A stretch of DNA of 64,000 nt from Botryllus schlosseri (taxonomy: Eukaryota), in NCBI GenBank assembly GCA_051294905.1, contig CM119380.1:18848001-18912000 (forward strand). Reading direction: 5' to 3'. A program made the position numbers and the translations under genes. Below the pieces are notes generated by a model. The model worked only from the letters and a program-made list of their open reading frames with translations, made no database searches and had not been told where the DNA came from. Positions 18,574 to 49,900 of the stretch are shown one piece after another. Positions within the stretch are counted from its first letter, which is position 1. Each line of letters starts with the position of its first letter.

Positions 18574-21500
18574 CAATGATATATATACAATGATTGGAAA
18601 CTACCGTGAGATCTGCGTTTCAGCGTGTTACTGGTCACGCTTCATCGCATACACAGTTGTGCTGTAAACAAAGGCTTCCTCAGCAATACTTCTTTGAGGA
18701 ACTAGCGATGATATATAATTCATTGGGTATATTTATCAGTGGCAATTAACGTTAACGTGTTGAATAGCTTTAAAAGTGCATTTCTTTCTCGCGTCTGGCA
18801 TTTTTCTTCTGATTATGCTAGCGGACCGCTGCCATATAAACGTTGATTCACGTACACGTACTTGGTACAGTCGTACACCTAGTTCACAAGATAAATTTCG
18901 CGCGTCATGCGCGTATCGTAAATCCAATTCACACATTGACGACTCGCAATTATACGCAATTCCCGTGATGTAGCCTTGTGACGACCAAAGAGGCTCATGT
19001 TCACACAGTCGTGGTCGTTCAACCTTTGTTGCAAGTGACACATCCTTCATTCCAACTTGCTAAATCAATGACATTATATATAACTAAATATCAAGCAGAC
19101 GTAGTTTTTAAAGGAGTAATTCTAGTTATTTTTTGAGTATTCGAGTAGGTTTGCCTACTTCCGCAGGTGATTGTTTTCATACTACTCACCAAACAAAAAC
19201 ATCACAACTTGTTTTTTTCCGGGGATATCTAGATCTCCTGAGTTTTGAAGGTTTTTGAAAATAGCACGCACATATTTAATGGCCATTTTGCGGCAGTCAC
19301 TAAGCTTAACCCTGCAATTTCAAAAGTGACTATTTCCAACTGACTCAGAGCGAACAACCAAATCTACTTTTAGAACTTTTTAAAAGTACTATACCGATTT
19401 ATATTTTCGCTACTTCTATTTGAACCTGAGTAAATCATTGTAGCAATACTTCCACTACTTCAGTAGCAACGCTGCATACATCACCCACCTCTGAAAAAAG
19501 TCACCTATCCATGATCATTCCACAAAATCTCGATGCCCTACAATACAGAATTGAATTTTCAGGATTCCATCATGTTATGTAAAGAAATACATACACTTCA
19601 CAGATATAGAACATTTACGAATACATAATTTAATCCTCAAATCCCTAATTCATGTGTATATGACCGAAATAATGATGCAGGCATTTGAAAAAAGTAACAT
19701 TAATATGCAACTGTACAGAACTAGACCAATGCAAAAATAACCATGTGGACAACAAAAACAGTTTATGCCTGATTTGTTAAGCAATAACAGTGCTAGATAC
19801 CAAGTTTTGTCATCTTCAACTTGGGAAAAGTATTTGGATGATGTCCTTAATAATGCAGCAGTACACTCGCTTTCGTTGGCTCAAGAATGGCCAAATACGA
19901 CCCGAATGATGCCGTATCTACTCTTGATGAAATCTGCCTTGTTTAGCTATTTGTCCATCTTTGCTTGCTCTTGCCCGAATCATTGGTAGGATGGGGAACA
20001 TTCTTTTTCCGTAATTTTACATGATATCAAGGTGTCACCAAATTCATTAATATCTGTAAGTGCAGAATAAGGATTCGGCTATTTGACCGTACTTGTCCAT
20101 GGTTAGTAAACGCATAAATGGTTATCGAGACTCAAGAATTTTTTGGTTTCCCAAGTTGCTGTTCCTTCAGCACAAGAATCTATCCATTTTCGCATTTTAG
20201 GCAAGAAATCATTTTCCAGCCAGTCCAAGCGTGAATCGTCTGGACTGCAATATGGCTTCAAGTTGGCGTTGTAGCTGAACTTGGTTGATGTATTCATAAT
20301 GTCGAACCACTTGTAAATACCGGCAAACCATGCAGAAGCTTCTTTAGCCTCACCTCTCCTGCTCGCATAATACGCGCAACACTATTAGAGAGAAGCTGAG
20401 CTGCAAAAATCTCCCGCATCTTTGCCAAGCTTTGCATATGAAAATGTGCATCCGTCAATTTGCCGCATCTCAATTCCGTCAGTTCAAACAGCCGTAAAAT
20501 GCCGCCATCGAATAAATTTACCATCCTTGTTGAGAAGTTTCGTACCACCAGTGCGGCTGGCGTAGAGGTTGTTGCGTACGCTCTTGGAACATCTTGCGAT
20601 TTGCACTGAGTCCATCAGCAACAAACGCAGATACCCGAAATCCACAATCCTCCAGGATGCCGACACATTTCCAGAATATAGGCCTACTCGAAAGTCGAAA
20701 TGAAGCCACCGACTTTGTTGCGCAGTATGCCAAGGGTTTGGAAACGGACGTTACCAGACCACTGGCATAAACTTGAAGAGCGTGTGTAGCTGCATGGTTC
20801 ATCATCATCTACAGGTCTTGACTCCCCAAGATCAACGAATCCTACCATTCCGTCTTTCGTTGTACTGAATACAATATTCTCTTTCACTGAAAATGCAAAA
20901 AATCAGAAGTAGTTAGACACATGAAACATCACCGTGAACAGCATTGCTGAAATATTCGCGGTGAAGATTTCGACACAGCTATAAAGTCATGAGAACACAA
21001 TCTAGCCAATTTACAGGCAAATTCAAGGTTGGAATTGCTCCAATTTGCAATTTTATCGATTTGTGTCCTATACGCAAGAGCAAATGCATTAGACATTAAA
21101 ACGAAACTCGTTTCAACAGCTTACCAGTCAACTACCATAGGAATCAAAATATATAGCCAAGGTAGCCCACCACTCTGTAGTGCTTATGCAATGATGAAGA
21201 GTAAGCTACAGTATAGAATCATTTCCTCACCTTTCAACAAATCAGATGTCGCGAATGAAGTTCGCAAATCTTCAAATCGCCTTTTTTGTACAATTGATCC
21301 AGCCACGATATTGACGCATGCTCCTTATAAATTTCTCAAGGTTTTCCGCCCATTCATATTTGGCGCCAGTACAAAAACGTTTAGCTGAAACTTTAAACAA
21401 ATGCGCATTGGCAGAGGTTTTAGCACACCCTAGTATGCAACACTATCTCACATCTGACGCAACCAACTATTCATCAATCAACTATTAGTGAGAAAAAAGA

Positions 21501-25295: not shown

Positions 25296-28200
25296 TCAAG
25301 GAAAAGAGAGGAGTATGCCTAAATGTGATGCGTATAAATGTGTTCAGGTATTTTCATCTCTCTGTTATAACTTCGCGTTTCGTCATCGGGTATCAAATGT
25401 ACCAGCACTTGTTCTATCTTGCTCTCAAATTCGCGCCAACACCATTCCAGTCAGCTGCTAACTTTTCACGAGCGAAATGTTGACACATAATACGTTTCAT
25501 CAACAGAAAACCGCCTTTCATTCGCGGCTATTGGGACATAAGGACCCACGCCTCACAACAATGTGTGCCCATAAAAGAAAATGAGATGAAAGGGGGCGGT
25601 ACACGTTTGTTTCTGGCTGGACCCCTCGATCTCATTCGATAACCACGCAAAAAAGTTTCCAACTGTCGACTTTAGGACCGAACTACGGGACAGTCCGCTT
25701 TGCTGAGTCTTTACTCTATACTGTAGTTCCAAATGTGTAGCGGTCGTATTAGAATTATTATATTATGATCAGCCAACCGCGTCGCGAGGGTGATAACGCT
25801 AAGTGGTTACATGGGATGATCATTGCTCATGTCATATCTCTCGGTGACATGAAATGGAGGTAAGAATGTTTGAACGACACAGGCGAGCAAACGATCCAAA
25901 CGAGTTCGACTGATCGCGCTTCGGCCAAGCGCACTCAACGAACGTGTGAACTGCGTAATGATGTAATAAAATGTTTCCCTTGTTGAAAGATCGCCCTTAT
26001 TGTGAAGTTTCGACGATAAATCAGCGAGATTGCAATTTAATAAGTCTCCCGTGGCGTTCTCCGGATCGCCATGGACAAAGCCCCCTGTTTTCGCAATGCA
26101 ATCTTGGCGTGCCGCGCCGATACGAATACGAGCAGTTACTGCCAGCGAGATGTCACGTTGCTTTACAATTTAGTGTAATTCGAGCAATATTAAAAATATG
26201 ATTGAGGAAGTAACGCGGGGTAGATATATCGCGATGGGGATATTGTGAGCAGCACCGTACTTGTCGGATACAGACGGAGGATTAATACGTTGGAGAAGGA
26301 TGCCGGCGTTGATATGTTTGATACTATTGCTATGCAACGGATATGCGATTTCCGAAGATCTTCTACAACTCCCACCTGCAAAACGTCTGGGTGAGTCGAT
26401 ATTATGCTATTGCATTTGACGCGTCTTTTTTTTAACGCAAGGATATCAATAAAGAATATCCGCTATAAATAATGAGTACGCGCTACGATGCTGTTTGGAC
26501 AATGGACAGGACAGGTTTGCTTTTACCGTACTTCGCATATGTCGCAACTATCTTGCGCGTGTTTTTCGGCCGACAACTTTTCCCAAATGGTTCTGCAGAT
26601 CTGTGTGAACAGTGTTTTGCCCAAGCGCCGCCGTGTCGTGTTAATCTGAAACGTCTTTATTCCGAGTTTTTACATGGTTAGCGTACAAGAAATAACAATC
26701 CCGCGACACACGGTTTCAATGCGTCGCATTTCTTTCTCTACTAGGGCGGGAGTGGGGTGCCATTCAATTCGCTCTTTTTCGTTTTGTCTTGCTGAAGGGA
26801 TGGTTGATTACGCGAGTTGTAAATAACGCTTTTATGTCGCCGACTATCGTGAAAATGACAAATGAGCTTTGCCGTGGTGCCGCAGCGTGATTTAAATCAC
26901 CGAACGAATCCAGACACCGCGTAATTTTTGGAGAGGATTTGATTCGTAAATCCTAGTAACACCTCCAGCAGTGAACGCTATAACGAGTACGTGGACCAGG
27001 ACGTTCTATGCCGTAAAGAAGTATCGTTGGCCGTCGACTCAGTCCCTGATTTGACCATCGGCGCTGGGTATTTACAATAGCGGTTTTTTCTAGTCAAGCC
27101 GGCTCTGATATAGCAACGGCTTCGGAAAATTGTGATTCTCAATTTGCTACCGACAGCATTTAGTCACGGTTGGCATCATATTGTGTGCGCACATTTAGTA
27201 CAGAGATACACATGCTTATAGATTGCTCAGATATTACGATTCTCTCAATCTCAATAGAATTGGTCATTTCGTAAATGGGCCAAATTTTCGATGCATTGAC
27301 CGCATCTGCATCAATTGAGGAAATCAAGGTCAAGGAAACTTCCCAGGCTTCATACATGTGACTGAATTATTGCGACTTTGAACCCTTTGAGTAAATGAAT
27401 GCGAATTCATCTGCGTATGCACTATGCAGTTGCTAATGCTACGAAACGTTATTGCGAAGCATTTAAAATAGTAGTTCTCAAACTTTTTTTTAGAGACGCT
27501 CCTCTTTATGATAGTGAAAAATTTCGCGCCCCCTTATCGTCATATCACAAAATGCAACCAGAATGCTAGCAATCCCAACGGATAGTAGATGGCATTGAAG
27601 GTTGGGACTGTTGATGAGATAATTCTCAAATATGAAATTAGGACTATACACAGAACAACAAGTATGACTTAGGGGTAAATCGCGTCGCGCGCGAAATAAA
27701 TTACCAGTTGATCGCAGCTTTGCGCCCCTTCAAATGATTTCGCGCCCCTTCGCCTGTGGTGCGTATACGGGATGTGTAATTCGCGTGGCGTGTTCTATCT
27801 GTGGCTCGGTATGCGGTTGTGTTTGATCAATGGCAATGAATATTTTGATGCTGCTTTGTATGAGCGACCATGTCGTTTTTATTCATCCTAATAAGAGGCT
27901 CGTTGAAAAATTTTAGGATATTGAACGTGGCGCCCGGCTTTGTACCTTTGACAACTATTTAGATTGCGCCATTCACGGGATCATGTGATCTTTCTAAGAC
28001 CAACGGATTATCGCTTGTCGGAATTAAGGCGCTCCGCGAATTTAATAAGAAAGAAAACACTTTGGTCGCGTTTTATGGGATAGACAATATGGAATGCCAT
28101 TGAAATGGGGATCCAAGTTTGGGAGGGATAATCGTGTCATTTTTGTTATTGTGTGCGGTCGCTTCTCAGGTTTGAAGATACGAGTGTGGTTGAAATACAT

Positions 28201-30228
28201 CGGACAATCGCCGCTACAGTGTAAACTGTGCGCCTATCGACGCATAACATTGTCTTTTTGTGGTTTTACCATTCTCAATTTCGAAAGGATATCAATCTGT
28301 TGTAGGCCACGCAATATCGCATCGCCGCGCTATATTCAAGAGGGCGCATAAGTGCACCCTGTTGTGACATTTCACAACGTGTGGACTTCATTCTAGCATA
28401 ATCCGATATACTTAAACCGCGTGTGGTTAACGTCACTCGAAGACTTGACACTCCGGCGGACTTGTCATATCGCGAGCCGTATTTGTTTCCAGTAAATAAT
28501 TGTGTCTTTGAAGGATTGTATATAAACAGTGTATCTGTACGCTCTCTTGAAATGTATTCCTCTTATCTGTTCGCACAGGGAATACAAGTCACTCGTAAGA
28601 TTGAATTAGTTGTGTAATGTGGCTTATCAGTGGTGACTTAAAGTTTAATTGCTCATAGTATTTCAACCGTTGCTAACTTGAACAAGACAGATACGTCGAC
28701 GCAAAAACGCTTATCTATTTCAGAGCGGCATTCTCTCAATTAGGTGAAGCCAATATTAAAGTATTCCAAAAACCTGATATATAGCCCACATCATGAAATA
28801 TATGCGGACCTTGATATTAGCGTTACTTGTTGACAATAAAAATTGCGAGGATGATTATCCGATTCCTTGTTCAACCAGCACATGTTTTGGTCCCTTTTAC
28901 TTTTCGTCAACCATAGCGACTCAAGTAGCGCCCCTCTAAAAACATCAACACCCCGAAGAAAATCTGATGCGTGCCGTTATATGTTTTCACTTTGTCATCA
29001 TGTATTAACGATCGCGCTCGGCGATATTATCATGTGATTAAGCGATTCCTTGTTTCCGTAGCGGCGCAAATCAAACGAAATTCCGCTGGCGAGATTATGG
29101 TCCCATGGGGTCGGTAGGATGACGTATTTGTGGGTTGTTCACGTAATATTTCCGTTGTCGCGCGTTCCGCGATCCAATTATGTTACTTTTTGTACATGGG
29201 GATGTCTGGGTAGCCGGATAAAAATGACACTCGACAAATAAGGCTCTGTGTCGCTTCGCCCCATTTGAAGATTCCACCTCTAATCATTATTGGTTACTGT
29301 CAGGACGTGACAGATCGTTCGAAGAGAAGTTTTCTCTGATTGATTGCCTCTTTTCGCCAATTCAACAGCTTACCTCATTAAGATGCGAATGTGTTGATTC
29401 CATTGGTGTCCTATGGTAGCCCAATCAGAAATAGGCGTGGTCAGGATGGAAATTGGAGACGTGCGCATTCTTTTACATATTGACATGGCGTCACGAATGT
29501 CTATTGTGACGCAGTATGACAAAATTACATTATACAATTATCATGTCGCAACTTCGTATACGGGATCTCGATTCTTGAATGGGCGAAATGTTACTCTCTT
29601 GCCGTCATGAAGCAGCTACACTTGATGTCGCTGAACTACGGCCCGTTACAATATTTTGTGCGGTACGCGAAAGTTTATCAAGCATAAAATGAAATTGAAT
29701 GAGAAATAGAATCACTCCAACGACTAGTTTTACGATGTAGTGGATTGTTTTCCAATTGCTGTTGCAATAATCCGACCATGGCGATGACATATTTCAAACT
29801 TCTTCAGTCGCTATGTAGTCAGTCAAAACTGAATTTTATGATTTCGCAGCACAAGTGGAATTCTGATTGAATAGTATATTCATACTGTAATGAACCCGAA
29901 TATTTTCGACTGACACGTCAGGTTCATTTCAATATGAATATACTATTCAATTGTATACATAAAGTTCTTCACCTCCGAGAAGCTCTTCAAGTTGGATTCT
30001 ATAGTTTAGAACAATAGACTAAAACTATCGGTATTTTATTTAGCCAAACAAAGCTAGTCATTGCCAGAGGTGGAATGACACTTCTACTTCTACAGAACAG
30101 TATCCAGTTTATTAGGAAACCTAGGCCTACCATACGTACTCATTTACGTACTTATACAAATACCTGCTTCTGCTCGTACTTGAGTAAAAATTAACGATGT
30201 TGCTTATACTTCTACTGCGTAATAGTAC

Positions 30229-31490
30229 CAGAGGTTTTCAAAGTAGTCAAGAACGCTACTCGAGTAGAAGTAGAAGTAGCGACGAAAAAATCTGCTCAAG
30301 TACGGGTAGAAGCATTTCTTCCATCAGCCACCTAAAACTACTTGAAGTAGAGGTAGAACTGACTGACTTTAAATCTGCTCAAGTAAATAAGTAGTTTTGA
30401 AAACGGTCGCAATTCGTTCGCATGGACTGTCAAGAGCTGCAAATTGAGCTATGCGGGAGGTGCAGAGAGCTTGATTCGTATCGATGCATCCCAGGAGGTA
30501 TCAATTTTCGACAAAATAAGCATCGTCCTCATCATGGGATGCAAACTATAGCATTGATATGAAAATGAGATACTAACCCTTTGTTTACTCGAACACCCAG
30601 TCTTACAAAATAGCATGACATGGCGCCCTACCTCAAATTAGTATAAGGCCCCTAAAGTTTAGGCGAAGAGCAATACGGAGAAGTTGTATCGGATACGGTT
30701 TCAAAATTTTTGCGCGATTACTATACGTTGTTGAAAAATATGGTGGATCGTAAGATTGTATATAGTGGAGGTTTATTTTCGGAAAATAGAAGCATTACTT
30801 GCTTTTATACCTTAGGATGTATGTTCTGCGGACAAAAAAACTGAAATTAATTAAAACTCAAAGTATGATACTCGGGTTGAAAGAGAAATACGAAAAAGCG
30901 GAAAATATATTTTTCTCGTCTTTTTTCCAGAAATATGGTCTGCTAAAACACGTGTAACGTTTAAAAAAGCCGGAGTCCACTTTTCCAGATTTGGACACGT
31001 CATGGGCTGCTAGCGTACGATATTATAGGCAGTTGCTAGATTGCGAAACGGAAGTTTCAAGCGTTATGGTGGGCCATATTTACTGTGATGAAATATTTGA
31101 AACGGGCGACAATGCTGTGTGAGCGGAGCCGCGCCATCCGGTGCTTAATTTATATTCACCGATACCTTCGTGAAAACATATTTTTGACAGTCTAAAACTA
31201 CTGTGCGCGAAGCACAACAAAAGTTGTGGGTTTTACTTGACTCTTATGAAAATTAAATGTTGGTACTCCGTGAAAACAGCCCCGAAATTCGTCAGGCTAT
31301 CTTTCTTATTGGAGGATTACACTACTTCTACTTCACAAACTGAAAATAGCAAAAAGTAAGTAAGTAAATCACACGATATTACGTAGTAGAAGTAGCGAAA
31401 ATCAGATCTACTTGAGTAAGTACTAGAAGTAGAGGAAAATTACTTTGGTACTTCAAAAAAGTAGAAGTACTTCGTTACTGACCACCTCTG
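30229..31490 (+). mobile_element. Full-length CAGAGGTGG-family hAT-type non-autonomous element
   Basis: Ends CAGAGGTTTTCA / TGACCACCTCTG; perfect 8-bp TSD AATAGTAC at 30221-30228 and 31491-31498; AGTAGAAGT subterminal repeats. Confidence 0.9.
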
Positions 31491-31529
31491 AATAGTACTT
31501 TGAAAACCACGAGTGTTACTGGATTTAAC

Positions 31530-31800
31530 ATTGGTGTGAGTGCTGAGTATGTTCTGTTTAGTAAACCTTCTTCATAGCGTTTAAGTTCAATGCCATTAAA
31601 AAGCGAATAGTTGAAGATGAATCTTTTATTCCAGAGCTTCCCAAACTTTTTGCCCGTGATACATTTATACTCCTCAAATTTAGCTCGACACGTCACGGTT
31701 AATCCGATAAACAGCTCGGAATACAAAAGTATTTCAAATGATTGCTGCAACGAGAATAATGCTGCTAACATGTCCTTTTTGGAAGACCCAAGACTCTCGC
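31530..31800 (-). pseudogene. Possible hAT transposase C-terminal dimerisation-domain relic
   Basis: DMLAALFSLQQSFEILLYSELFIGLTVTCRAKFEEYKCITGKKFGKL follows the hATC spacing F-x5-I-x2-K-x3-(R/K)L; lies in older AGTAG-rich repeat sequence. Confidence 0.4.
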
Positions 31801-34321
31801 TTCAGACTCCGCTTGTCAACATTATACGACACATCAAATGAATGGTTGAGTGTAGTGCAGTATAAAGCAGACATTCACAACACGGAAAGTTGTAACGTTC
31901 ATAATAAGGAAATCAAGTACATGTCCTGAAAATCCGTGATTCTATACTTGAAATTGAGTAGAAATTTGCGGTAGCGATACTTCTACACTTCTTGTTCTTG
32001 TATATCACCAATGCCTAGTTTGATCACTTCTGAAGTGTAATAGTCGATACGTGAATGCGACAGTTCATATGAATTAACGAGTCGGATTTCGGAATGACTA
32101 TAGATAGCATACCTGTTGAAGTAGAAGTAATATACTAACAAAACTACCTAAGTAAGTGAAACAAGTTTGATAGAAACTCGATAAGGGGACGATGTGTCTG
32201 AAATTTTTTGGAACCCCGGCCTATACTATCGTTCGGCCCGGGAAAAGAATCAGATTCAAAATGTGGCTCATGAATGTAGCCTGCGCCGATTCGCCATGTA
32301 AACGATGTTTGTATTCGTTCGGTCACGTCTAGTCGCCTTTCGAGCTCTAGCAGTAACAGTTCTGACCGAGAATCACCCTAACGCAACATCGTATTCCAGT
32401 TTCTCAACGTTACCTCAATATACGCACGTTTTCTTGTTGAGTTTCTCCATTGTGACAAACGTGCGGTTTAGTATGAAACAGCCTAAAATACCGCAATTGT
32501 TAGCCCTAGGTTTGTGTGCCCACAACCGGGCAATGAACCCGATATTACCTTTGCGAAGATATTTGTGTAAATAACAAGGTTTCAATATATATAACGGCAC
32601 GTGTGGCTCACGCGTCCTGATGGATATGGGAATAAGCAATTGTGTATTCATTGCATCCGAGGATTTAGTAGTTAAAAAGTATCATTACGACATAGCGGTT
32701 GGTATAATTCTAATTAAAATATTACAGGAATCTATTTCCGCATCCGGTCTTCATCGTGTTCATTTAAGTATACTACAACATTTTAACTGTTACGCTATAA
32801 TCATTCCTGAAATTGTTTCCTTACACCTCTATATCATACAATGAATTGCTTATGCTTTACAAGATGAGGGGTATCAGTTTATGTTTGCTTAACCTACGCC
32901 TAATTAAAGCGTTTGGCTTGCTTTTCATGTCGCCATAATAAAATAAATGGTTGTCTGGGGTGAGGCGACATGTCCGTACGAAAAGTGTCGTGTGCTGTGA
33001 AGAATAGGACTCATTGTATATTGGCATGTCATTATAGAATACAGTTGTATACGGCGAGTTGGAATAAATTCATGTTGGAAGCGTGGCGTGTCTTAGCGGT
33101 ATTAACTCCATCCTTAGTAAGAGTATTATTTGGATATTGTTGCGAGGGTGGAGAGTGGCAATAAAGTATTATTTGACTGTGAGCGCTGGGGTTGAAAAAA
33201 GGTGACGGTCTGAAGTATGTTCGTACTTGGGGTACGCTATTCTTTTAGCAGAGTCGTAGACTTGGAATTGAATTTATGGTACGGAACGACAAGTCCGGAT
33301 TATAGTACGCGTTCAAAGGATACGCCGTCGTTCTTTACAAACCCATTGCCACGGTTGAAAGAATCGGGACATAAACGGCTTCCCGTTTCTTATGTTTGGA
33401 CTCTGTTCATATGTTGGTAATAATGGGTAAAGGTGTGGTGACAATTCCTCAGCCGATAGCGCAACGCTGCGGAAGCCGGATGTTTTGTCCAGCCTATGGC
33501 TCGGAACTGGGTATTTCGTACGGCTTAACGTCACGACACTATAAATACAGAACTATGACGCAATGTAGAATGCGCTGAAATGCGCAGCAGTTATGACTGG
33601 CAGGGGCAGTGTTATGTCGCGTTAAAATTATTGATCTGTTGTGGTTGGGCGTAGAAGACCAATTAGGGTTGTTAATGAGACTTTATAAGTTACAAGAATG
33701 CGCCGTGAAGGGTTGTTGAGATGCCCTGAAGAGGTCATTGTCCTTCGAGCCTGACGGATATTTGCGGTCCGAGACGACAGTCTTGTCACCTCGCTGACAT
33801 ATTTGCGGTGTGGAGGAGACATCTGATATAGACCTCATTTTGGAAGGCATATTTTCCAGAAGTAATCCTGACTTTTGGGACGTGGCATATTTGTAGCAGG
33901 TGGTCTCGAAATAACTCCGAAATTATAGATCGACGCCAGCATTCATATCTCGCCGACTTTGAATTTGTAGCGGAAGAGAGATTTAACCGATGTGCGTGTG
34001 CGTACGCGAGTTCAAGTCTGAGGCGGAAGAAATCTGCTTGCCCCACGTTTATGTCAGTTGTATCGTTTGTGTTGGAAGCAATAGTGAAGTGTATTCGGTG
34101 GACGTAGAATACCAGGAGAGGTGTGATGGAATTAATGCACGTTTGTGGTGGAGTATAGCGTTGGAGGTTAAATTTTGCTATTTGTTTAGCGTCTGCGACT
34201 AAGTACGTTAGTACCTTAAGTTTTGATGTACGAGCAGCTGGGTCGACAAATGCCGCTCCACGTCGCACTGTCCTTGACAAAAAGAGCAATCGAGGACGAA
34301 ATCCTACACCGTTAGACGATT

Positions 34322-34949
34322 ATGTCACAGATTTGCGATCGAATTAGAGACAGGAGGTCGCCATGCCATCACGCGAATGCGACTGGATGTGGCAGTGAGA
34401 CCTCAGATCGTGTCGCGGACCAGCGCCGAATTTGTTCAGGCTATTGGGACTTAATTAGAGCGTTTCTTTTGACCCGGTGGGAAGGAAAAGAACAGACCAC
34501 GGGAAAATCAATCGCGGCCGTAATGAATGGCAATTCCGCTACTCCGCGCATTCTTCGACACATCACTCACGGGGGTAGTCACAAAGGTATCGCGAACCCT
34601 TGCTACTGTGCGCGACAGCATTTCCAACTTGCTACAAAGCCGGAAAAGTGTCTTCGTCCGTATCGTGTTACTAAATATACGGATAGCGGCGATAGCACCG
34701 AAAGTCCGTGTGTTTTCAGCTGCGCCGAACGGCGACCGCGCGCTAATCCGACAAGCCTGCGCAAATTGCACAAACATAGATCGGTTAATCTACGGCTTCT
34801 GATTTATTGCGCTGGTTTCATCATGTTGATTCTGTTCGGGCCCGCTCAAGCTAACAGATCGCGCAGAAAAAAGGATATGACAAATGGGTCGGCTCGAAGT
34901 TACCATGATGTAGCTATGCCGATGTTTCCCAACGCCGGATCCAATCCAG
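34322..34949 (+). CDS. LAMA1/2: Laminin alpha exon 1: long open leader plus hydrophobic signal/anchor [21 protein letters not shown]
   Basis: Open frame from ATG 34322 (further in-frame ATGs at 34523 and 34823); donor ccag|gtatac is phase 1 and matches the phase-1 acceptor at 37857, joining ...[13 protein letters not shown]. Confidence 0.7.
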
Positions 34950-37900
34950 GTATACACATTTACCTACGAAATATGGCACCCAAAATTTGTATTCTGATCT
35001 TGTACGGGATGCACTATTAGGTCCAGTAGCAGGGGTAAGAATTACATAGTATCAAATGCGTCCAATGTGTAATGGTTCTTTGTGTCGTGTCACCCCTTCC
35101 AAAAGCATTGTTTAGCCGTTATCTACGTCTCATTTGTTATACTTGGGAATTGTATCGGTACAAAGGAACTTTACGCTATGTTGTATCCCTCGTAATGAAA
35201 CACATGCAATTATCGTCATAAATGATTACTCAAAGTGATGTATTTTGCCTTTGACTTTGCGATCTGCCCGTTTCTTTTATAATCCTTGATTGATTGATGG
35301 GGCGTGATAATTTTGGTTCGGTGCCACTACGTCCCAGTCGGGCATAAAAGAATCTTTCCCTTTGTATGGTATCATGCCGGCTGAATTCTTTGTCACGTGG
35401 GATATATATCTGACGTTGACCAAATATCGGCACGCCACAAGGTCTTTGAGCGTTGTGTACCCAATATGTACATAAAACGCGGAGAGGTGGGACTTGGTGA
35501 TAGAAAAAAGATAATTTCCTTCCTCGAAGTTTGATTTCCGTGCGTAATAACCAAGGCTTCTATTGGATGATGAGCCTCATTCAAGAGCCCGTGATTTACT
35601 ATGACACATACGCACAGCACAATGTGTATAGGCGTAAAAATCGGCGATTATGTCTACATTTCCTTCTTTTTAACCGTTAGCAAGAGTTTCGAATGTCTTT
35701 CAATCTATTTCATATCGTATCATGATACTTTCCCGTATTTACCGCGCATGGTCATTATGCGTACCGAGACTGGTTATCCCTTATCAAAGTAGTAATATAT
35801 TTATATAATAAGATACAATACAAAATTATGTATTTTCTGTCGCTACCACACATTACGACCTTATATACGGCTTAAAAAACTGATATACTGCTAGTTTACT
35901 GCCTGGTAGTGAAGTTTGAAGTAGATTTGTGACGGAACGAAGATTTTTTCGCTTGATGGCCGTTTATAGTCATATCTTATGCTTTTAAGGATTACCGGTG
36001 AATGTGAAACAATGAATAATCTGTTGCGGTAATGCTAATCGCGGTGCTCTTTGGTGTAGGAAAGTGCTTCATCGCGTGGGTCAACTTGAAGTAGTTCGTT
36101 GAGTTACACGCACTTTTATGTCTTAAACGGCATGACATTGCGTGCATTTTAACGTGAGAACGTTTCGCGGGATTAATACGTCACACAGCATTGATTCCGC
36201 GATATTGCAATCACCCACCGACAAATTTGAGATGGTAGGAATTACTTCTGATTTCCAATTAGATACTTTCCCACGATTCTTGAAGGTTAATAGACACTAA
36301 TGACCGTGAAGCTTTCTCACCCATTTACGGCCTATCTGTAACGAATTATTCAATTACATTATATTCTGTCAGCGTTATACTCTGCTTTGCCAGCCGCACC
36401 TAGCATTTTGAGCACCTGACATTAGTTGATCGTTGAAATCTTTGAAATAGGCTATCCTATATACATACTCTCATTCATGTGTAAATAACATGCTGGTAAA
36501 GAGTTTATGATATAGCCTAGCGCATGCATGGCGGTCATTTATCCGATATTCAAATTTCTGGTCACGGCCGATATCGGTATCCGATAATAATGACGCGGTC
36601 AACAGAAATGCTGACGAAGTAATTTGCCGGGGCTTGGTGAGAATTAGGGTTCAAAGGGGCATGAAATAGAAATACCGGTACTCCCATAGAGGGGTAGATG
36701 ATGGTACAGGATTGAAACATCTAAAAAATTCTGGTTGTCTAATTAAACTTAATGCAGCGAAATGTATGCAATCTAATATTACTATATGGCAGGTTTCTAT
36801 GCTCAAATTTCACTTGTAATCAAATTCTTAGTTCCCCTGTAAATGCTACAGGAGATCTGTATCGCGCGAAACGATCCGGGCTCGGCGTGCAGGCACTTGT
36901 CTTTCTCATACTGACGACAGTGAACTTTGATTTGATATTAATTTAGGGTTAACATAACAACATGTCCTCTATTAAGAGGATTAGTCCTCTCTTTTCAATA
37001 AATTGAAAGTATCCCCGGATGACGCCTGAAAGCCCTATTTTTGGGAATTTGTCCTCTCTTTTTTGAGTAAAAGTGATAAAATGCGATCAAAAACTCGACT
37101 CCTACGCCGTGAACGCCAGAGTTGGCAAGACAATCAACTAAAATAAACGGCGTGACGGGTATCTCGGGATTAGAGATGGGAAATGTGACTAATTAGTTTC
37201 AGTTAGCACCACAAAAGCAACGTAAAAAGCGGGGTAATTCGGGAGTCGAGTGATGTGATAACCTTTTTTTAGTCAACACAGTACCATTGGTCGAAAATTT
37301 TTCAAAATCACTAGTTGTCTTTTCCGGTACTAGATCTTTCAGAATTTCTGAAAAGTTTTTTTCGGATCTCATAATATGGTTACCCTATATGAATTGAACT
37401 TGGTTTTTGTTGTATTTCTTCCTAATTGTGAATGTAATTCAATGTCCATGTCAAGTTTTTGCGAATCCAATAATTCTAATTATATTCTAATTTAGGAAAA
37501 ACCTGTGCAGTTTTTATCTGGTTCCATAAAGCTGAAATGTTTCTAGTTGTTCAACTCTCGACGATGCAAGGCACGGATTGAATGAAATTAGGTCCCAGTG
37601 AACTTCAAATTAAAAAGTGGGCTGGCAAAATGCATTCCGTGTCAAAGTCCTTTCATGTGATGATAATAGCCTCTCGAAGCGCGCGAGAACGTGTCGTCCT
37701 GGAATGCAAACTGTTTATTACTTATACCCAAAATACTGAACGCTAGCACACACTGTTATTCCGCCTTCTCCTCCTCTTTGACCATCGGCTTGCACGGTCT
37801 CACCGTCCGCGTCTCTTTGGATTTTTACCAATCCTGCGAACGCTATTGCATTGCAGGATTATATCCATCACTAGTGAACCTAGCGGCGTCGGCGAGAATC

Positions 37901-40900
37901 ACTGCCAACGCGACGTGTGGACAAGACGGGCCAGAGCGTTACTGCAGACTGGTTCAACACCACGAGAAATTATTCAGGCGTAAAAAAAGACGAAGTCACT
38001 GTGACGTAAGTAAGGGGCAGCCGCGAGTACCGTGACGCTCCCGTGATTACGTTATCGGAATCGTGATTTTGTCAATATCCCTGCTCTTGTTCAGTATCTA
38101 AACGTCCAGCGTTCTTCTGGTCAAATGATTATTTGACAAATCTTCACTGTGTTTTACAGATATGTGACGCTACAAATGTGGAGACGAGACACGACATCGA
38201 ATACGCTATTGATGGTATTGGCCGTCGATGGTGGCAAAGTCCAACAATAAACAATGGTTATAATTACAATTGGGTGACGATTTCATTGGATTTGAAGCAG
38301 GTTCGTAGCGTGCTACAGCATTTTCTCATCAGTGCATACTCCGATGATACGACTCAGAAAATGGATATTCTCTTCATATGCTTAGTGATCAAAAATTGCA
38401 GTGAGGTAACAAAATTACAGAAATATGTACAATTGTCCACTCATCTAAGGCCTGATCAGACGCAACATATTATGAAAATTGTAATCTGATGGCTAAAACC
38501 AAGTGGCTCGAGTGTGATATCGAGTTATAGTCGTTCCATCAAAATTTATACATTATTTTATGAATCGCTTATAGGTTGCAGGAGAAAATTGCCGTCCAAA
38601 AGTATCGTGTGAAAATATTATATTTCATCTCAAAAAAGAATATGATGTATTTGAGTAGTTTCGTAGTTTTGTGATGGTGATCGAAAACAGTTAGGTATCT
38701 TATTAGTATATTTCATTCTTAATTTCAATTCGGTGTTTGGGTTCAATCACACACATCTTTTTCTATCGCGTAAGAATGGATATAGTTTTCGACCTTTCAT
38801 GCAACAGGTTACGCGCGTACTTGAAATTCATTAAAGCGAACATTACATTCATCTACTGCACTTGTAATATAATCATCCGAAGGGTGTTATACCCAAATCA
38901 ATGCGTACTATCAGCGAGTTGAAATGAAGCCCGCCTAGCAAAGTCGCCGATATCTGAAGCATAGTTTGATGATTTCAAGGTTCCGTAACACATTATCGGG
39001 CAATCAATGTGATTAAAAGGCCTTTTAAAATGAGCTTATCTCCACATCACGAGCGACGCAGTTTCGTCCTCGGTGGCCTCAAATTGATGTTTCACTTACC
39101 CCGACGTTAATGTCATGATGAGCTGGATACAGTTATTTTGATAGGCCCGCTATGAGATGTTGGTACTAGGTAGCTGTCGGGGAAATGTCATCACCGTACG
39201 TATTAGTACTTCTGCCTTTCGTCTGCTGAGTGGAATAATATTTCGATATAAAGCGTATTCACTGACATCAAGCGTGACCCGCAGACGGTGTTACTTGACA
39301 TATCTTTTGTCCCACTGTGGTACAGATAGGCTTTGTAGTGAACTTAACGGATCTGATACTCGGAAGTAATTCCTCACGGCATTTTAATCGACTATTTTCA
39401 TTGCTCCTGTATTGAAAGTAAGACTTTTGAATGAAAGTTTTTCATCGCGTGTGTACAGTATCGTGAATCTCACTCCTTATGGCGGTTTATCTTGACTGCG
39501 AGTATGATGTCAAGGCAGATATTGTCGGAAGACCTGTACATGGAATGACATGCTAAAACATGTGATTAGCATAACTGCGTATAAGATTTACATTACGACC
39601 GCTATGTGGAATAATTTCGCCCTTTCATGCGATGGCGTTAAGTTAAATGGTCAAACTTACTGTATAGGATACATTGCATATGCGCAGTGGCAGTAACTCC
39701 AATAAATGGCCGCAACCATTCGATGCAGACATAACAATATATCACAGTTTAGGAACTTTGTTGCACCTTGCCGCGTGGCTTTTAACCACGCGCCATATAC
39801 CTACCGAAATTGACCCAATGAAGAAAAGACGATAGGGATGTATGCATATTGCATATGCATGCTTGTGTGCCTGGGAATATGCAGAGTAAGTCAATTTTGA
39901 AAACGCCAAAAATTTCCGGAATTCCGTATTCTATCAAATCCGCAGTGACGAGGCCGATGACAATATTGACGTCACAGATCCTTTTTTTTCGTTGGGGGGC
40001 GATGCGATGGCATTTATTACTATAGATCCTCCGATGCTTATTATAAACGCTATATTATTTTTATATGATTGAAAACATATTAATGTCTCAATCGATTTCG
40101 TTGCGCTTTGCAATATTATCTCAACGTCCCATTGTGATTATCTGCGCTATGCTTTGTTATTAGACTTGTGTTATTGTTGCGATGAATAGGATTCGACGTG
40201 AATGTAATTTCCGATTTGTAACGTGAATAACCTCGCTACTGAATCGAGTTAACAGATTGACAGATCTAACTGTTGCTTTTGTGATAAAGCGCATAATGCC
40301 CGAACGCTGTTGAATTAACCTCAACGTTCGCCGAGAAATATTTTCGTTGGCCGCAGATAGTAATCCATCGTCGCGACATGATTGGGAGTCCGCGATGTTG
40401 CAACTGTGCCCTCAATTCGTGTCTTTAGAAAAGATTGTAACGTCCGATGATGTATAGTACTTGCCAGCGACATTATGATTTCATGGCATTATCTGCGCAT
40501 AACATTGTGCGTTGTGTACACCCAATATACCACTGACACGTAATTTATGATTGTATCAAACGATTAGTTGGCGCAAATAGCCTACATATTGATTTGATGC
40601 GCATCATCCGATAAACACATGTCTTCGCATTGAAACACTCAGAACCGTGTATATATAATATATGTTTACTCGTATTACTTAGCGCCTAAGGTGTGTTATG
40701 CAAATATACATAGAGTTAATGCTACTGGTTACGGGTTGATTTTGCGTGTACTGACAAGGAATGTACATTCCAGTAAACACATCATTATGTTTTATCCTTA
40801 AAAACTATGAAATAATATATGTCCTTTGTAGACGTATCCGTTACACACGTTACACATTATGAATTATTATGATGTTGGTTTTAGAGTGTGCATTGTTGTC

Positions 40901-46900: not shown

Positions 46901-49900
46901 TAACCAGAGGTGGTAAAAGATATTGGCGTTGCTACCCAAGCGGAAATAGAATTACCGCCACGAATTTCTACTCAATTACAAGTAGACGCAGCAATTTCAA
47001 AGGCGTGTCAAAACTACGTCAAGTCAAAGCTGAAAACGAATAACACAAAAAGTACCCAAATAGGTGGTTGCGAAAATTAGTTTTACTACTTCCGAAATTG
47101 CGAGGGGGATCTTCGCGACTATAACGCAATATGACTAATAACAATAACAATTAGGCGCAATCTCAAAACATAGATTCAGCAGTTACACTGTGATGGCTAT
47201 TTCACGCAGTTCTTATGATCATTTCACGCATAGAAGCGACGGAAACCTGTCCCAAAACAGATTTCCCCTATCCAAGAGTGTAAAAGTATAGTAGTTGTGT
47301 CTATAAACTGTTCAAGTAGAAGTGTAAGTATAGGCTGAAAACGAAACCACTTGAGTAAGCAGTGCTAATAGACAAAACCTACTTGACTATACTTCGAAAA
47401 ATTCGTTAGGGACCAGTGGCCACATCTGATACTAACTGGTGGGGTGCATCCATAGGGTTACATTCTAAACAAGAATCAATTTAAAACAGAGATGTTTAAA
47501 ACATGTTTTTTATTTTTATTTTCGGTTTTCTTTTCAGTCATGACGTCACGAATCATCAATTGACAGTTGACATGTAGCAGAAATATAGCTACTTCGACGA
47601 AAAACGCTTCCGACCATACTGCCATAAACACACATACTATACTATACATCGTTATGCAGCATTTGTACGGCCGGCGTTCATCATCATCATAACACCCCCG
47701 TTCCGTTCCAATGATCTATATATCTACTTGCTATAACTGTTGAACCAACAACGATTTCGAGGGTTCCAGCCACTCCATATCGTATGCGTCGACTATATTG
47801 GGTACGAATCGTCCGAATAGGCTCGTACTTCAAGTTTTCGAAAGTATTTAAATAATTATGGCATAATTATACAACGTCTGAAAAAGAACACAATTTTGTT
47901 TTTCAAAAAAAAGGCATTTGTTTAAAACACTGTTTGTTTTAAATGCAACCGTAGGTGCGTCATATTGTCTCTATTAAAGTGTTATCAGCGTTCATTGTCT
48001 ACTTATAGTAATGGAACTAGCGAAAATAATTTCAACAACCAAGCGATTTCACGGTTTGCTTGGCCGGTGAAGAGTAATTATCAAGTATTACTACTCGAAA
48101 CACAAAATCCGATCACTTAGTCCCTGAGGTAAACCCATCTTGTATGATTTACAACAGTTAGCAATGACCTCGCAGGTGTTCCAAGTGGCATACTTCATCC
48201 TGAAAGCCGGTGATTCCCCGCGCCCAGGCAATTGGATATTGGAAAAGTCCATGGACGGAATTACGTACGAACCCTGGCAGTACTTCGCCATCACAAATCA
48301 AGAATGTCGCGATCTATATCCGGGGAACAGAGTGTCGAGTTTCGGCGCTACGCGGATGTTATACGACAGCGAAGTGATATGCACTTCTTATTTTTCGAAG
48401 ATAGAACCTCTGAAGAATGGAGAAGTAAGTTCATGTTGTTATTCAGTCGAGGTGATGAATGTGTGACACCAGTCATGAAGTATTTCTGCTTTAAAAAAAA
48501 TGTTTTTCAACTACTTCCACTTCTACTTAAGATTGTTTTCACCAGTCTATAGTTACTTGTTGCACTTTGAACTTTGTGAAAAGTAGAAAGTAGTTTGGGT
48601 CATCTTCTAATTTCGAATTTAGCCCCCCCCCGATTAACTGCTAAATGTAAGCAACCAGTCGACCAAATCTACTTTTTGACACTATTTATTTTAGTACTTC
48701 TCATATACCTTCATTTACTACTAAAGACATAAGACTTAAGTGTTAATAGTTAAGCCATAAGACTTAAGTAGTTCTTACATGTTTCCGAAATCGCTATTCC
48801 TACTTATCACCGAGTAGAACTTTCCGGCGTTACTTCTACTTCTACTTGAGTATGAGCACTGACAGCTTTCACCACCTCTTGTTAGATGTCAATATCCTCC
48901 TGACAATGTTCGGACTTCGGCCACGGCTTACTGCGGCTTAGGCATGTTTTGGCATACCAAGAGCCGATTACCATAATTTTTGGTGTGCAAATAGATTTCG
49001 TTAAAATAGACTATATTCTTGTCTTTAGATCCACATTTCACTGATTAACGAGCGACCTTCTGCCGAGAATCCTTCTGAGGAGTTGATCCGGTTTATGTCA
49101 GCGCGTTACGTCAGACTGCGTTTCCAGAGGATCCACACACTGTTGGGGGATTTAATGACCCATTCCAGAGACGTCATAGACCCAATGGTCACGAAACGAG
49201 TGAGTAGTACTGGCTAGCCATTTTCATTTTCTACATCCACTGCTGTATGAGGCGATATTGGCAGCGTTCTAAGTAGGTGAGACATTGAATCAGTTGCTGA
49301 CCACGATTTCAAAAGGTTATCTATAGGTGAGAATCATTTGTATGGATTATTGATTGGCCATGATCCGATTATTATCGGAACAAGTGTTAACAGCAATCCT
49401 GTTAAGTAGCATGACTTATGGTGTGTGGAGATGTCGGACTTACCGTGTTAGCTTGGCACACTTCCTTGTAATGGTTGTCTCGTTGGCTGTTTTTGGGCTT
49501 TAGAAAAATCGCAATGGTTTTAGCATTGTCGCGTGAATTCGTCGCTATACACACGCAGGGCGTGACATTTCTTCCTGTGTATGAACACTTGCGCCCGCGG
49601 GGTGTACTAGCTGTCTCAAAATATGGACGCAAATTTGCATTGTAAAGTCAGCTGGATCCAATTAGGACAGCTCTTATAGTAGCACCGACTCCATTCCCAA
49701 ATTAATGGTGGTCACTTACGAAGTACTTCTATATTTTCGGAGCACCCAAGTACGTTTTGCCTACTTTCGCTACGTACCCAAGTAGTTAAGTTTTAGTTGT
49801 CCATTTCTACTTGAACATTGTTTTTTAGAGCAAACCACTTACACTTTACGCTTTGGATTTTTAAAAGTAGAAAGTAACTTGGGCTCAAGTTTGCCTCACT

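What the first reader, a model, noticed from the sequence alone, without database searches (positions are those of the whole stretch)
34322..34949. Laminin exon 1 has a long open leader before its hydrophobic segment: possible membrane-anchored (type II) laminin alpha
Seen: the only hydrophobic stretch ([21 protein letters not shown], 34790-34852) lies 156 codons after ATG 34322 and 89 after ATG 34523. The only ATG close to it (34823) would give a 10-aa signal, which is too short. The frame is stop-free for 167 codons upstream of that ATG; at 3/64 stops per codon this has a probability of about 3e-4. The segment is preceded by basic RKLHKHR and followed by a signal-peptidase-like AQA and a furin-type RSRR (34856-34867). 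Known: laminin alpha chains normally start with a short cleaved signal peptide, and basic residues before a hydrophobic segment favour an N-in (type II) orientation. Inference: either an unusually long signal peptide, or a tethered laminin alpha with a Cys-containing cytoplasmic tail that is released by signal peptidase or furin.
Basis: partly seen in the sequence, partly recalled or inferred. Interest (0 to 1): 0.72.

Follow-up and report, generated by a model that had tools for sequence, protein, structure and literature searches.

The report
Laminin signal sequence behind long leader
A sea-squirt laminin alpha gene opens its reading frame 156 codons before its secretion signal. This leader is in the mRNA and stays open in a related species, but it evolves like conserved non-coding sequence, so a long signal extension is likelier than a membrane-anchored laminin.

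Summary
Spliced RNA contigs from two studies join 34949 to 37857 and 38005 to 38160. They run colinear from at least 34257 through the whole open leader, at exon-level depth.

Exons 2-4 are a laminin alpha1-type LN domain.

One related species (L001) has the same ATG, the same upstream stop, the same second ATG and an unbroken frame through the hydrophobic segment. ATG 34823 is GTG in one allele and TTG in the relative, so a 10-residue signal is excluded.

The leader does not evolve as a protein:
- Differences are flat over the three codon positions (0.22/0.24/0.22).
- Synonymous to non-synonymous single-change codons are 9:27, against 33:16 in the LN exons.
- No fold or protein family is recognised.

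It is nevertheless more conserved in DNA (78-84%, no net indel) than the LN exons (67%). The conservation also extends 130 nt upstream of the ATG.

Best reading: a conserved regulatory mRNA leader that ribosomes read through from ATG 34322 (or 34523). This gives an N-terminally extended internal signal sequence, and laminin is released by signal peptidase, or possibly by a furin-type protease.

A functional cytoplasmic tail or a stably tethered laminin is not supported.

The mRNA 5' end and possible spliced-leader use remain unmapped.

The parts
34173..34189 (+). Polypyrimidine tract ending in AG (ttttgctatttgtttAG). Cross-species conservation begins here. It is a possible spliced-leader or cis-splice acceptor, so the 5' edge of the mature exon may be 34190.
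   Evidence: Alignment to L001. Identity jumps from about 0.4 to 0.87 at 34160. Use as an acceptor was not tested.
34190..34321 (+). Conserved leader upstream of the main ATG (about 84% identity, no indel after 34176). It contains a conserved 29-codon uORF at 34226-34315 in the same frame, ending at TAG 34313-34315.
   Evidence: The uORF is 22/29 identical in L001. Its two ATGs have weak contexts (-3 T, -3 C).
34322..34789 (+). Open leader of 156 codons from ATG 34322 (context -3 A), with a second in-frame ATG at 34523. It is present in mRNA. The frame is open in both species, but substitutions follow a non-coding pattern.
   Evidence: RNA contigs 34257-34946 and 34339-34946. (P0001, 57-58% aa identity, same Met). 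(flat 0.218/0.237/0.224; syn:non 9:27; frame 0 has 0 stops against 4-12 in the other frames; simulated P of staying open is 0.02).
34790..34852 (+). Hydrophobic segment [21 protein letters not shown], read as an internal ER signal sequence. The h-region is about 16 residues, followed by a helix breaker G(P/S) and small residues at -3/-1 (AQA; VQG in the relative). A>G at 34823 (M168V) occurs in run X2.
   Evidence: hydropathy. (coding-like differences 0.43/0.19/0.43). (alignment). (the only confident helix, residues 157-172). (SNP).
34853..34949 (+). Linker of 33 residues between the predicted cleavage site and the LN domain. It holds the basic cluster RSRRKK at 34856-34873 (RGHRKK in the relative) and the conserved island DVxMPMFxxAGS. 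Exon 1 ends in phase 1 at 34949.
   Evidence: The only clear indel in exon 1 is 12 nt (in frame) and lies here.
34950..37856 (+). Intron 1 (GT..AG).
   Evidence: Joint seen in contigs of X1 and X2.
37857..38005 (+). Exon 2. The LN domain starts here with (G)[21 protein letters not shown].
   Evidence: Pfam Laminin_N. (aligns from residue 2 of the laminin alpha-1 chain 8dmk_A, E 2e-9). (joints).
38160..38300 (+). Exon 3, continuing the LN domain ([19 protein letters not shown]...).

Best explanation
Window 34190(?)-34949 is the first coding exon of an ascidian laminin alpha1-type gene. About 560 nt of it (34160-34720) form a conserved nucleotide-level element in the mRNA leader, with a conserved uORF and several conserved AUGs. 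Its function is most likely translational or transcriptional control; this is inferred.

No AUG exists near the signal sequence. Ribosomes therefore must start at a conserved upstream AUG. The likeliest is 34322, the first with a purine at -3; 34523 is the alternative. They then read through the leader in frame. This keeps frame 0 free of stops and frameshifts while leaving the peptide itself unconstrained and disordered.

The hydrophobic segment at 34790-34852 then acts as an internal, N-terminally extended ER signal sequence that translocates the laminin chain. The chain is released as ordinary soluble laminin. Release is most likely by signal peptidase after AQA (VQG in the relative). Less likely it is by a proprotein convertase at the conserved R-x-x-R-K-K.

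Shown here:
- the exon structure;
- presence of the leader in mRNA;
- conservation of the open frame and the ATGs;
- absence of protein-level selection.

Inferred:
- the start codon used;
- cleavage;
- what the conserved nucleotides do.
For: - Spliced contigs of two studies contain the leader colinear with exon 1-2-3. Leader depth (7.2, 5.6, 5.1) equals or exceeds exon depth, whereas intron 1 is covered only in small patches.
- The gene is laminin alpha: Laminin_N, EGF_laminin and Laminin_B hits, and best solved relatives laminin alpha-1 and alpha-5.
- The only relative of the leader among 1.8 and 5.8 billion proteins is P0001/L001. It has the same ATG, the same upstream TAG, the same ATG2, the same donor phase and no stop.
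- ATG 34823 is GTG in X2 and TTG in the relative.
- Frame 0 has 0 stops in both species; the other frames have 4-12.
- Probability that 106 neutral substitutions leave the frame open: 0.02.
- MAFFT finds no indel from 34176 to 34860. With blastn, only two compensating +1/-1 pairs appear. Other conserved non-coding patches of the locus carry 13 gap openings in 563 nt.
- The coding signature starts at the hydrophobic segment (0.43/0.19/0.43), and the -3/-1 motif is kept.
- The leader has a non-coding substitution pattern yet 78-84% nt identity, against 67% in the LN exons, whose third positions differ at 52%.
- Precedents for long translated extensions ahead of a signal peptide: L-VEGF, whose 180-aa extension is cleaved off (PMC9024919); PTPRJ (PMC7725344); long signal peptides in general (PMC2447879).
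Against: - Only one relative is available, so the frame-conservation test rests on P of about 0.02 plus the a-priori 5e-4. The window was selected for having an open frame.
- The mRNA 5' end is unmapped. Contigs cannot show spliced-leader addition, and the raw RNA runs gave no reads.
- A conserved acceptor-like TTTTCAG|CTGCG sits at 34713-34724.
- In yeast, long N-terminal extensions and high hydrophobicity reduce signal-peptidase cleavage and give membrane-anchored forms (PMC8277137). Cleavage is therefore not assured.
- Basic residues right after the predicted cleavage site are unusual.
- No RNA-structure signal explains the nucleotide conservation (z -0.8 and -1.15; no Rfam hit; only 2 compensatory pairs).
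Confidence: 0.5

Rival explanations
1. The segment is an uncleaved type II signal anchor. Laminin alpha is made as a membrane-tethered chain with a 156-residue (or 89-residue) cytoplasmic tail, and either stays tethered or is shed at the RSRR/RGHR-KK site by a furin-type convertase.
For: - The leader is translated if any AUG is used.
- The uncharged span is 19-22 residues, long enough to cross a membrane.
- Long N-lengths and hydrophobic cores disfavour signal peptidase in yeast (PMC8277137).
- R-x-x-R-K-K is one of two conserved islands in an otherwise poorly conserved linker.
Against: - There is no protein-level selection on the supposed tail.
- Cys residues are conserved no better than average.
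- The tail is predicted disordered and not protein-like.
- The strongly hydrophobic core is only about 16 residues, with a G-P/G-S breaker and a kept -3/-1 motif.
- The C-terminal flank is as basic as, or more basic than, the N-terminal flank, so the positive-inside rule gives no N-in bias.
- The strict furin motif R-X-[KR]-R is not kept in the relative.
- An LN domain tethered about 35 residues from the membrane would conflict with its known role in the three-chain polymer node (established knowledge; 8dmk).
Confidence: 0.12
2. The leader is a purely untranslated, conserved 5' UTR or DNA regulatory element. Translation of laminin starts near the hydrophobic segment at a non-AUG codon (for example the conserved CUG at 34799), or by internal entry. 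The open frame is a coincidence preserved by the high nucleotide conservation.
For: - The substitution pattern is flat and non-coding.
- Conservation extends equally into the 130 nt upstream of ATG 34322, which cannot be part of the ORF.
- The peptide is not protein-like.
- Given 78% identity, the conditional chance of staying open is 2%, which is not negligible.
Against: - Scanning ribosomes would have to pass eight AUGs, six of them conserved, including one at 34322 with A at -3.
- The only conserved near-cognate codon has a poor context (-3 C/T). It would give a signal with no n-region.
- Frame 0 alone is stop-free in both species.
- Indels are absent or compensated within the ORF, but not just upstream of 34176.
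- No IRES-like structure signal was found.
Confidence: 0.2
3. The productive mRNA lacks the leader. Either a spliced leader is added at 34720 or another site downstream of 34523, with the leader being an outron or the tail of an upstream operon gene, or an unseen alternative first exon supplies a normal short signal peptide and splices to exon 2.
For: - Earlier notes say the genome is an ascidian. About half of Ciona genes are SL trans-spliced, and many give both spliced and unspliced forms (PMC4691747).
- Assembled contigs lose 16-nt leader tips, so they cannot show trans-splicing.
- Acceptor-like motifs at 34189 and 34719 are conserved.
Against: - An mRNA starting at 34720 has no AUG before the hydrophobic segment in the X2 allele or in the relative.
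- Leader depth equals exon depth in two studies.
- No contig joins exon 2 to anything else, and there is no loose end at 37857.
- A scan for ATG plus hydrophobic run plus phase-1 donor in 28000-37856 gave nothing supported by RNA or conservation.
- No plus-strand gene is evident upstream.
Confidence: 0.1

Closest known systems
L-VEGF / N-VEGF (VEGF-A 5' leader translated from an upstream in-frame codon)
   Same: A long, highly conserved mRNA leader is open in frame with the signal peptide of a secreted protein. The 180-aa extension is translated and then cleaved off, and the secreted part leaves by its own signal peptide (PMC9024919). The leader also holds a regulatory uORF (PMC2367723, listed).
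   Different: VEGF has a canonical AUG directly before its signal peptide, and the long form starts at CUG. Here no AUG lies near the signal, so the extended form would be the only AUG-initiated product. Translation and cleavage are not shown here.
N-terminally extended / long signal peptides (NtraC model; PTPRJ, DCBLD2, MMTV Rem SP98)
   Same: The hydrophobic core and cleavage motif are preceded by tens of residues. The extension can act on translation rather than as a folded domain (PMC2447879, PMC7725344, PMC8725593).
   Different: At 156 (or 89) residues before the core, this is far longer than most of them. The extension shows no amino-acid-level conservation, whereas the Arg cluster of PTPRJ does.
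Type II signal-anchor proteins shed by proprotein convertases
   Same: An internal hydrophobic segment follows a long N-terminal part, with a basic R-x-x-R motif just beyond it.
   Different: The core is short (about 16 residues) and has a signal-peptidase motif. There is no charge bias, no constrained cytoplasmic domain, and the strict furin motif is not conserved.
Canonical laminin alpha1/alpha2 N-terminus
   Same: The LN domain begins with GL(F/Y)P..(L/V)NLA...ANATCG and aligns from residue 2 of the laminin alpha-1 chain 8dmk_A. LE and L4 modules follow.
   Different: From established knowledge, vertebrate alpha chains have a short cleaved signal peptide a few residues before the LN domain. 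Here the initiator lies at least 89 codons upstream, and a 33-residue linker follows the predicted cleavage site.

Membership tests
Laminin alpha chain | N-terminal LN domain (Pfam Laminin_N) of alpha type | tested here: met
   Laminin_N hits in exons 2, 3 and 4 (E 5e-9 to 2e-20). The best solved relatives are laminin alpha-1 (5e-27) and alpha-5, ahead of netrins.
Laminin alpha chain | LE (laminin EGF) repeats followed by an L4 / Laminin_B module | tested here: met
   EGF_laminin at 60417-60626 and Laminin_B at 63306-63524.
Laminin alpha chain | C-terminal coiled coil and five LG domains | not testable with these tools
   These lie beyond the window's 3' end.
Classical short cleaved signal peptide | Initiator Met within about 5-15 residues before the hydrophobic core | tested here: not met
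   There is no in-frame ATG between 34523 and the core. ATG 34823 lies inside the core, and is GTG in run X2 and TTG in the relative.
Classical short cleaved signal peptide | Hydrophobic core followed by small residues at -3 and -1 | tested here: met
   [19 protein letters not shown]|N in the window and FLIYWIGFVLLVLLG-SVQG|G in the relative. This was judged by eye against the -3/-1 rule; SignalP was not available.
N-terminally extended (long) signal sequence, L-VEGF type | In-frame start far upstream, with an uninterrupted frame into the signal, present in mature mRNA | tested here: met
N-terminally extended (long) signal sequence, L-VEGF type | Open frame conserved in other species | tested here: met
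   One relative only (L001): no stop, no net frameshift, simulated P 0.02.
N-terminally extended (long) signal sequence, L-VEGF type | Extension shown to be translated and removed | not testable with these tools
   No ribosome profiling or proteomics data were within reach.
Type II signal-anchor membrane protein | Uncleaved hydrophobic span of about 19 or more residues | tested here: inconclusive
   The strongly hydrophobic core is about 16 residues and the uncharged span is 19-22.
Type II signal-anchor membrane protein | More positive charge on the N-terminal flank (positive-inside rule) | tested here: not met
   Fifteen-residue flanks were counted by hand from the alignment. Window: +4 before and +5 after. 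Relative: +3 before and +5 after.
Type II signal-anchor membrane protein | Cytoplasmic domain under protein-level selection | tested here: not met
   Flat codon-position differences, syn:non 9:27. pLDDT is below 50.
Furin-type convertase substrate | R-X-[KR]-R motif conserved | tested here: inconclusive
   RSRR in the window, and RGHR (only the minimal R-x-x-R) at the aligned place in the relative. Both are followed by KK.
SL trans-spliced ascidian mRNA | Spliced leader joined at an AG acceptor | not testable with these tools

The most novel reading that the evidence does not exclude
In at least two ascidians the LN-bearing laminin alpha chain is made only as a precursor with a 156-residue translated leader and an internal signal anchor. 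One mRNA would then yield a transiently membrane-tethered laminin, released by a convertase at R-x-x-R-KK. It would also yield a cytosolic N-terminal fragment, as L-VEGF yields N-VEGF. The 560-nt leader, conserved like an ultraconserved element, would control when this happens.
Probability: 0.1. Interest if true: 0.8.

Novelty: new variant of a known kind. Interest (0 to 1): 0.45.

Why it matters
Laminin alpha chains are textbook secreted proteins with short signal peptides. A chain whose only AUG-initiated frame starts 89-156 codons before the signal would be an extreme natural case of an internal signal sequence. It would bear on how signal peptidase tells signal peptides from anchors.

The leader is also interesting in its own right. 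It is more conserved in DNA than the LN domain, between species whose silent sites are saturated, and it carries no coding signature. It is therefore a candidate translational or transcriptional control element of a basement-membrane gene in a chordate model group.

For annotation, any gene model that starts this protein at Met 34823 is wrong. That codon is polymorphic and is absent in the relative.

Tried and rejected
- **Raw RNA reads:** runs X18 and X22 gave 0 and 2 reads on the region, so there is no information on start, strand or spliced leader.
- **More relatives:** the search with the ORF around exon 2 and with the best-conserved core of the leader found nothing. The exhaustive HMMER search found only P0001. 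A metagenome scan with a 27-nt invariant stretch found nothing.
- **RNA explanation for the conservation:** there is no Rfam family. Folding energies are not different from shuffles (z -0.78 and -1.15). A two-sequence RNAalifold gave only 2 compensatory pairs.
- **Protein explanation:** no Pfam hit. AlphaFold mean pLDDT is 41. The Atlas recognition score of 985 is typical of non-proteins, and the best hit scores 0.77.
- **Dual coding or antisense coding:** rejected, because all three phase classes differ equally and the plus-strand frame-1 ORF at 34527-34802 is broken in the relative.
- **Repeat or transposon:** rejected, because the block is single-copy in the 495-Mb genome.
- **Intron inside the leader:** no contig shows one, and candidate donors are weak or not conserved.
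- **Spliced leader supplying the start at 34720:** from my memory of the Ciona leader, it would be out of frame and hit a stop. This was not tested with this species' leader.
- **Alternative first exon with a short signal:** the scan gave no candidate supported by RNA or conservation.
- **Operon with an upstream plus-strand gene:** no such gene was seen.

Full report
**Observation.** The sequence is as described.
- An ORF starts at ATG 34322 and a second in-frame ATG lies at 34523.
- There is a single strongly hydrophobic stretch, [21 protein letters not shown], at 34790-34852.
- ATG 34823 lies inside that stretch.
- RSRR lies at 34856-34867, and a GT donor follows 34949.

**The gene.**
- Downstream stop-free pieces carry Laminin_N (37670-38032, 38067-38486, 48128-48463), EGF_laminin (60417-60626) and Laminin_B (63306-63524).
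- The best solved relatives are laminin alpha-1 (8dmk_A, 5e-27) and alpha-5, ahead of netrins.
- Exon 2 aligns from residue 2 of the alpha-1 chain, so the LN domain begins at the exon 1/2 junction.
- Earlier notes of this scan call the genome an ascidian. I did not verify that independently. It matters because ascidians add spliced leaders to about half of their mRNAs (PMC4691747).

**RNA evidence.**
- Contigs of two runs from different studies are spliced, so they are RNA. Both show the joints 34949|37857 (GT..AG) and 38005|38160.
- One X2 contig is colinear from 34257 to 34946 and then continues into exon 2. X1 contigs cover 34339-34946 and run on into exons 2 and 3.
- Leader depth (7.2, 5.6, 5.1) equals or exceeds exon depth, while intron 1 is covered only by small patches.
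- Exon 1 is therefore at least 34257-34949 and contains the whole open leader. No splice is used at the acceptor-like 34719, and nothing else is joined to exon 2.
- Run X2 carries A>G at 34823, turning the only nearby ATG into GTG.
- Two raw RNA runs gave no usable reads, so the true 5' end and any spliced leader are unknown.

**Relatives.**
- Among 5.8 billion clustered proteins, and in an exhaustive HMMER search of 1.84 billion representatives, the 209-residue exon-1 product has one relative. This is P0001, a 253-residue ORF on a 5.6-kb genomic contig of another species.
- That contig (L001) is the orthologous locus. Exons 1, 2 and 3 and several intronic patches are colinear.
- In L001 the same ATG, the same in-frame TAG six bases upstream, ATG2, the donor phase and the whole frame are kept. 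The codon at 34823 is TTG.

**How the leader evolves.**
- *LN exons 2+3 (control).* The two species differ at 28%, 18% and 52% of first, second and third codon positions. Amino-acid identity is 65% and nucleotide identity 67%. Single-change codons are 33 synonymous to 16 non-synonymous. Introns hardly align.
- *Leader 34322-34789.* Differences are 21.8%, 23.7% and 22.4% (p=0.92 for heterogeneity). Single-change codons are 9 synonymous to 27 non-synonymous (Fisher p=1.6e-4 against the exons). The 62% amino-acid identity is near the 56% expected from neutral substitutions at that density.
- *Nucleotide conservation.* It is nevertheless high (77% overall, 81% in the first 200 nt). It continues at 84% for about 130-160 nt upstream of ATG 34322, and begins abruptly at a polypyrimidine-AG motif at 34173-34189.
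- *Where the coding signature begins.* It starts only at the hydrophobic segment (0.43/0.19/0.43).
- *Conclusion.* The leader is constrained as nucleotides, not as a peptide.
- *Consistent checks.* Pfam finds nothing. AlphaFold gives pLDDT of about 35, except for the helix at 157-172. The language-model recognition score is in the range of shuffled sequences.

**The frame is nevertheless maintained.**
- Frame 0 has no stop in either species, while frames 1 and 2 have 4-12.
- Placing the observed 106 substitutions at random keeps the frame open in only 2% of trials (0.11 for ATG1-ATG2, 0.17 for ATG2 to the core).
- MAFFT needs no gap from 34176 to 34860. blastn places two +1/-1 pairs, 5 and about 12 nt apart, which restore the frame. 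The one clear indel of the exon is 12 nt, after the signal.
- By contrast, four other conserved non-coding patches of the locus have 13 gap openings in 563 nt, and a 1-nt indel sits just upstream of 34176.
- There is also no AUG near the core in either species. Together these points make it likely that the leader is read through by ribosomes.
- Of the AUGs after 34190, those at 34226 and 34250 form a conserved 29-codon uORF in the same frame, with pyrimidines at -3. ATG 34322 is the first with A at -3.

**What constrains the nucleotides is unexplained.**
- No Rfam family matches.
- Folding energy is not different from shuffles in either species.
- A two-sequence consensus fold shows only two compensatory pairs.
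- The block is single-copy, is 50% G+C and has CpG o/e of 1.38.
- My inference is linear regulatory motifs in the mRNA leader (uORFs, protein binding sites) or a DNA regulatory module overlapping the exon.

**Cleaved signal or anchor?**
- For cleavage: the strongly hydrophobic core is about 16 residues, it ends in a G-P/G-S breaker, and small residues at -3/-1 are kept in both species.
- For an anchor: the uncharged span is 19-22 residues. Yeast experiments show that long N-terminal extensions and hydrophobic cores lower signal-peptidase cleavage (PMC8277137).
- RSRRKK aligns with RGHRKK, so only a minimal R-x-x-R-K-K is kept.
- Precedents where a long translated extension is removed from a secreted protein exist: L-VEGF (PMC9024919), PTPRJ (PMC7725344) and long signal peptides in general (PMC2447879).
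- I favour release as ordinary soluble laminin. A functional cytoplasmic tail is not supported.

**Remaining rivals.**
- An untranslated leader with non-AUG or internal initiation.
- Spliced-leader addition downstream of 34523.
- An unseen alternative first exon.

Each is weakened by the lack of any usable AUG downstream, the exon-level depth of the leader, the absence of other partners of exon 2 and the maintained frame. None is excluded, because the 5' end was not mapped and only one relative exists.

**Verdict.** It is a new variant of a known kind (an N-terminally extended signal sequence), with a separate unexplained feature in the strongly conserved, non-coding-like leader.

Noticed in passing
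window 34226-34315: A conserved 29-codon uORF (22/29 residues identical in L001) lies in the same frame as the main ORF. It ends at TAG six bases before ATG 34322. Its two ATGs have weak contexts.
   Followed up: partly
window 34173-34189 and 34713-34724: Two acceptor-like motifs (polypyrimidine-AG) are conserved in the relative. The first marks the exact start of cross-species conservation and may be the spliced-leader or cis-splice acceptor of this exon.
   Followed up: partly
window 35279-35545 (intron 1): A single-copy conserved non-coding element is 71% identical to L001 3350-3617, with 5 gap openings. An RNA contig of run X1 covers 35154-35366.
   Followed up: partly
window 33350-33465 and 32812-32905: Two further conserved patches upstream of exon 1 are colinear with L001 865-979 and 154-249 (74-76% identity). 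They are possible promoter or enhancer pieces.
   Followed up: no
window 33585-33993: Two 202-nt RNA contigs of run X2 lie upstream of exon 1 in sequence that is not conserved. They may be outron or pre-mRNA, or another transcript.
   Followed up: no
window 34823: An A>G polymorphism (Met168Val) in run X2 removes the only ATG near the hydrophobic segment. Any gene model starting there is wrong for that allele.
   Followed up: yes
window 20297-20808, minus strand: Decayed pieces of a TNP-like (P-element/THAP9-type) transposase: Pfam TNP-like_RNaseH_N at 5e-9 and a weak GBD hit.
   Followed up: no
If that is real, the unusual leader serves only the LN-bearing isoform.
   Followed up: no
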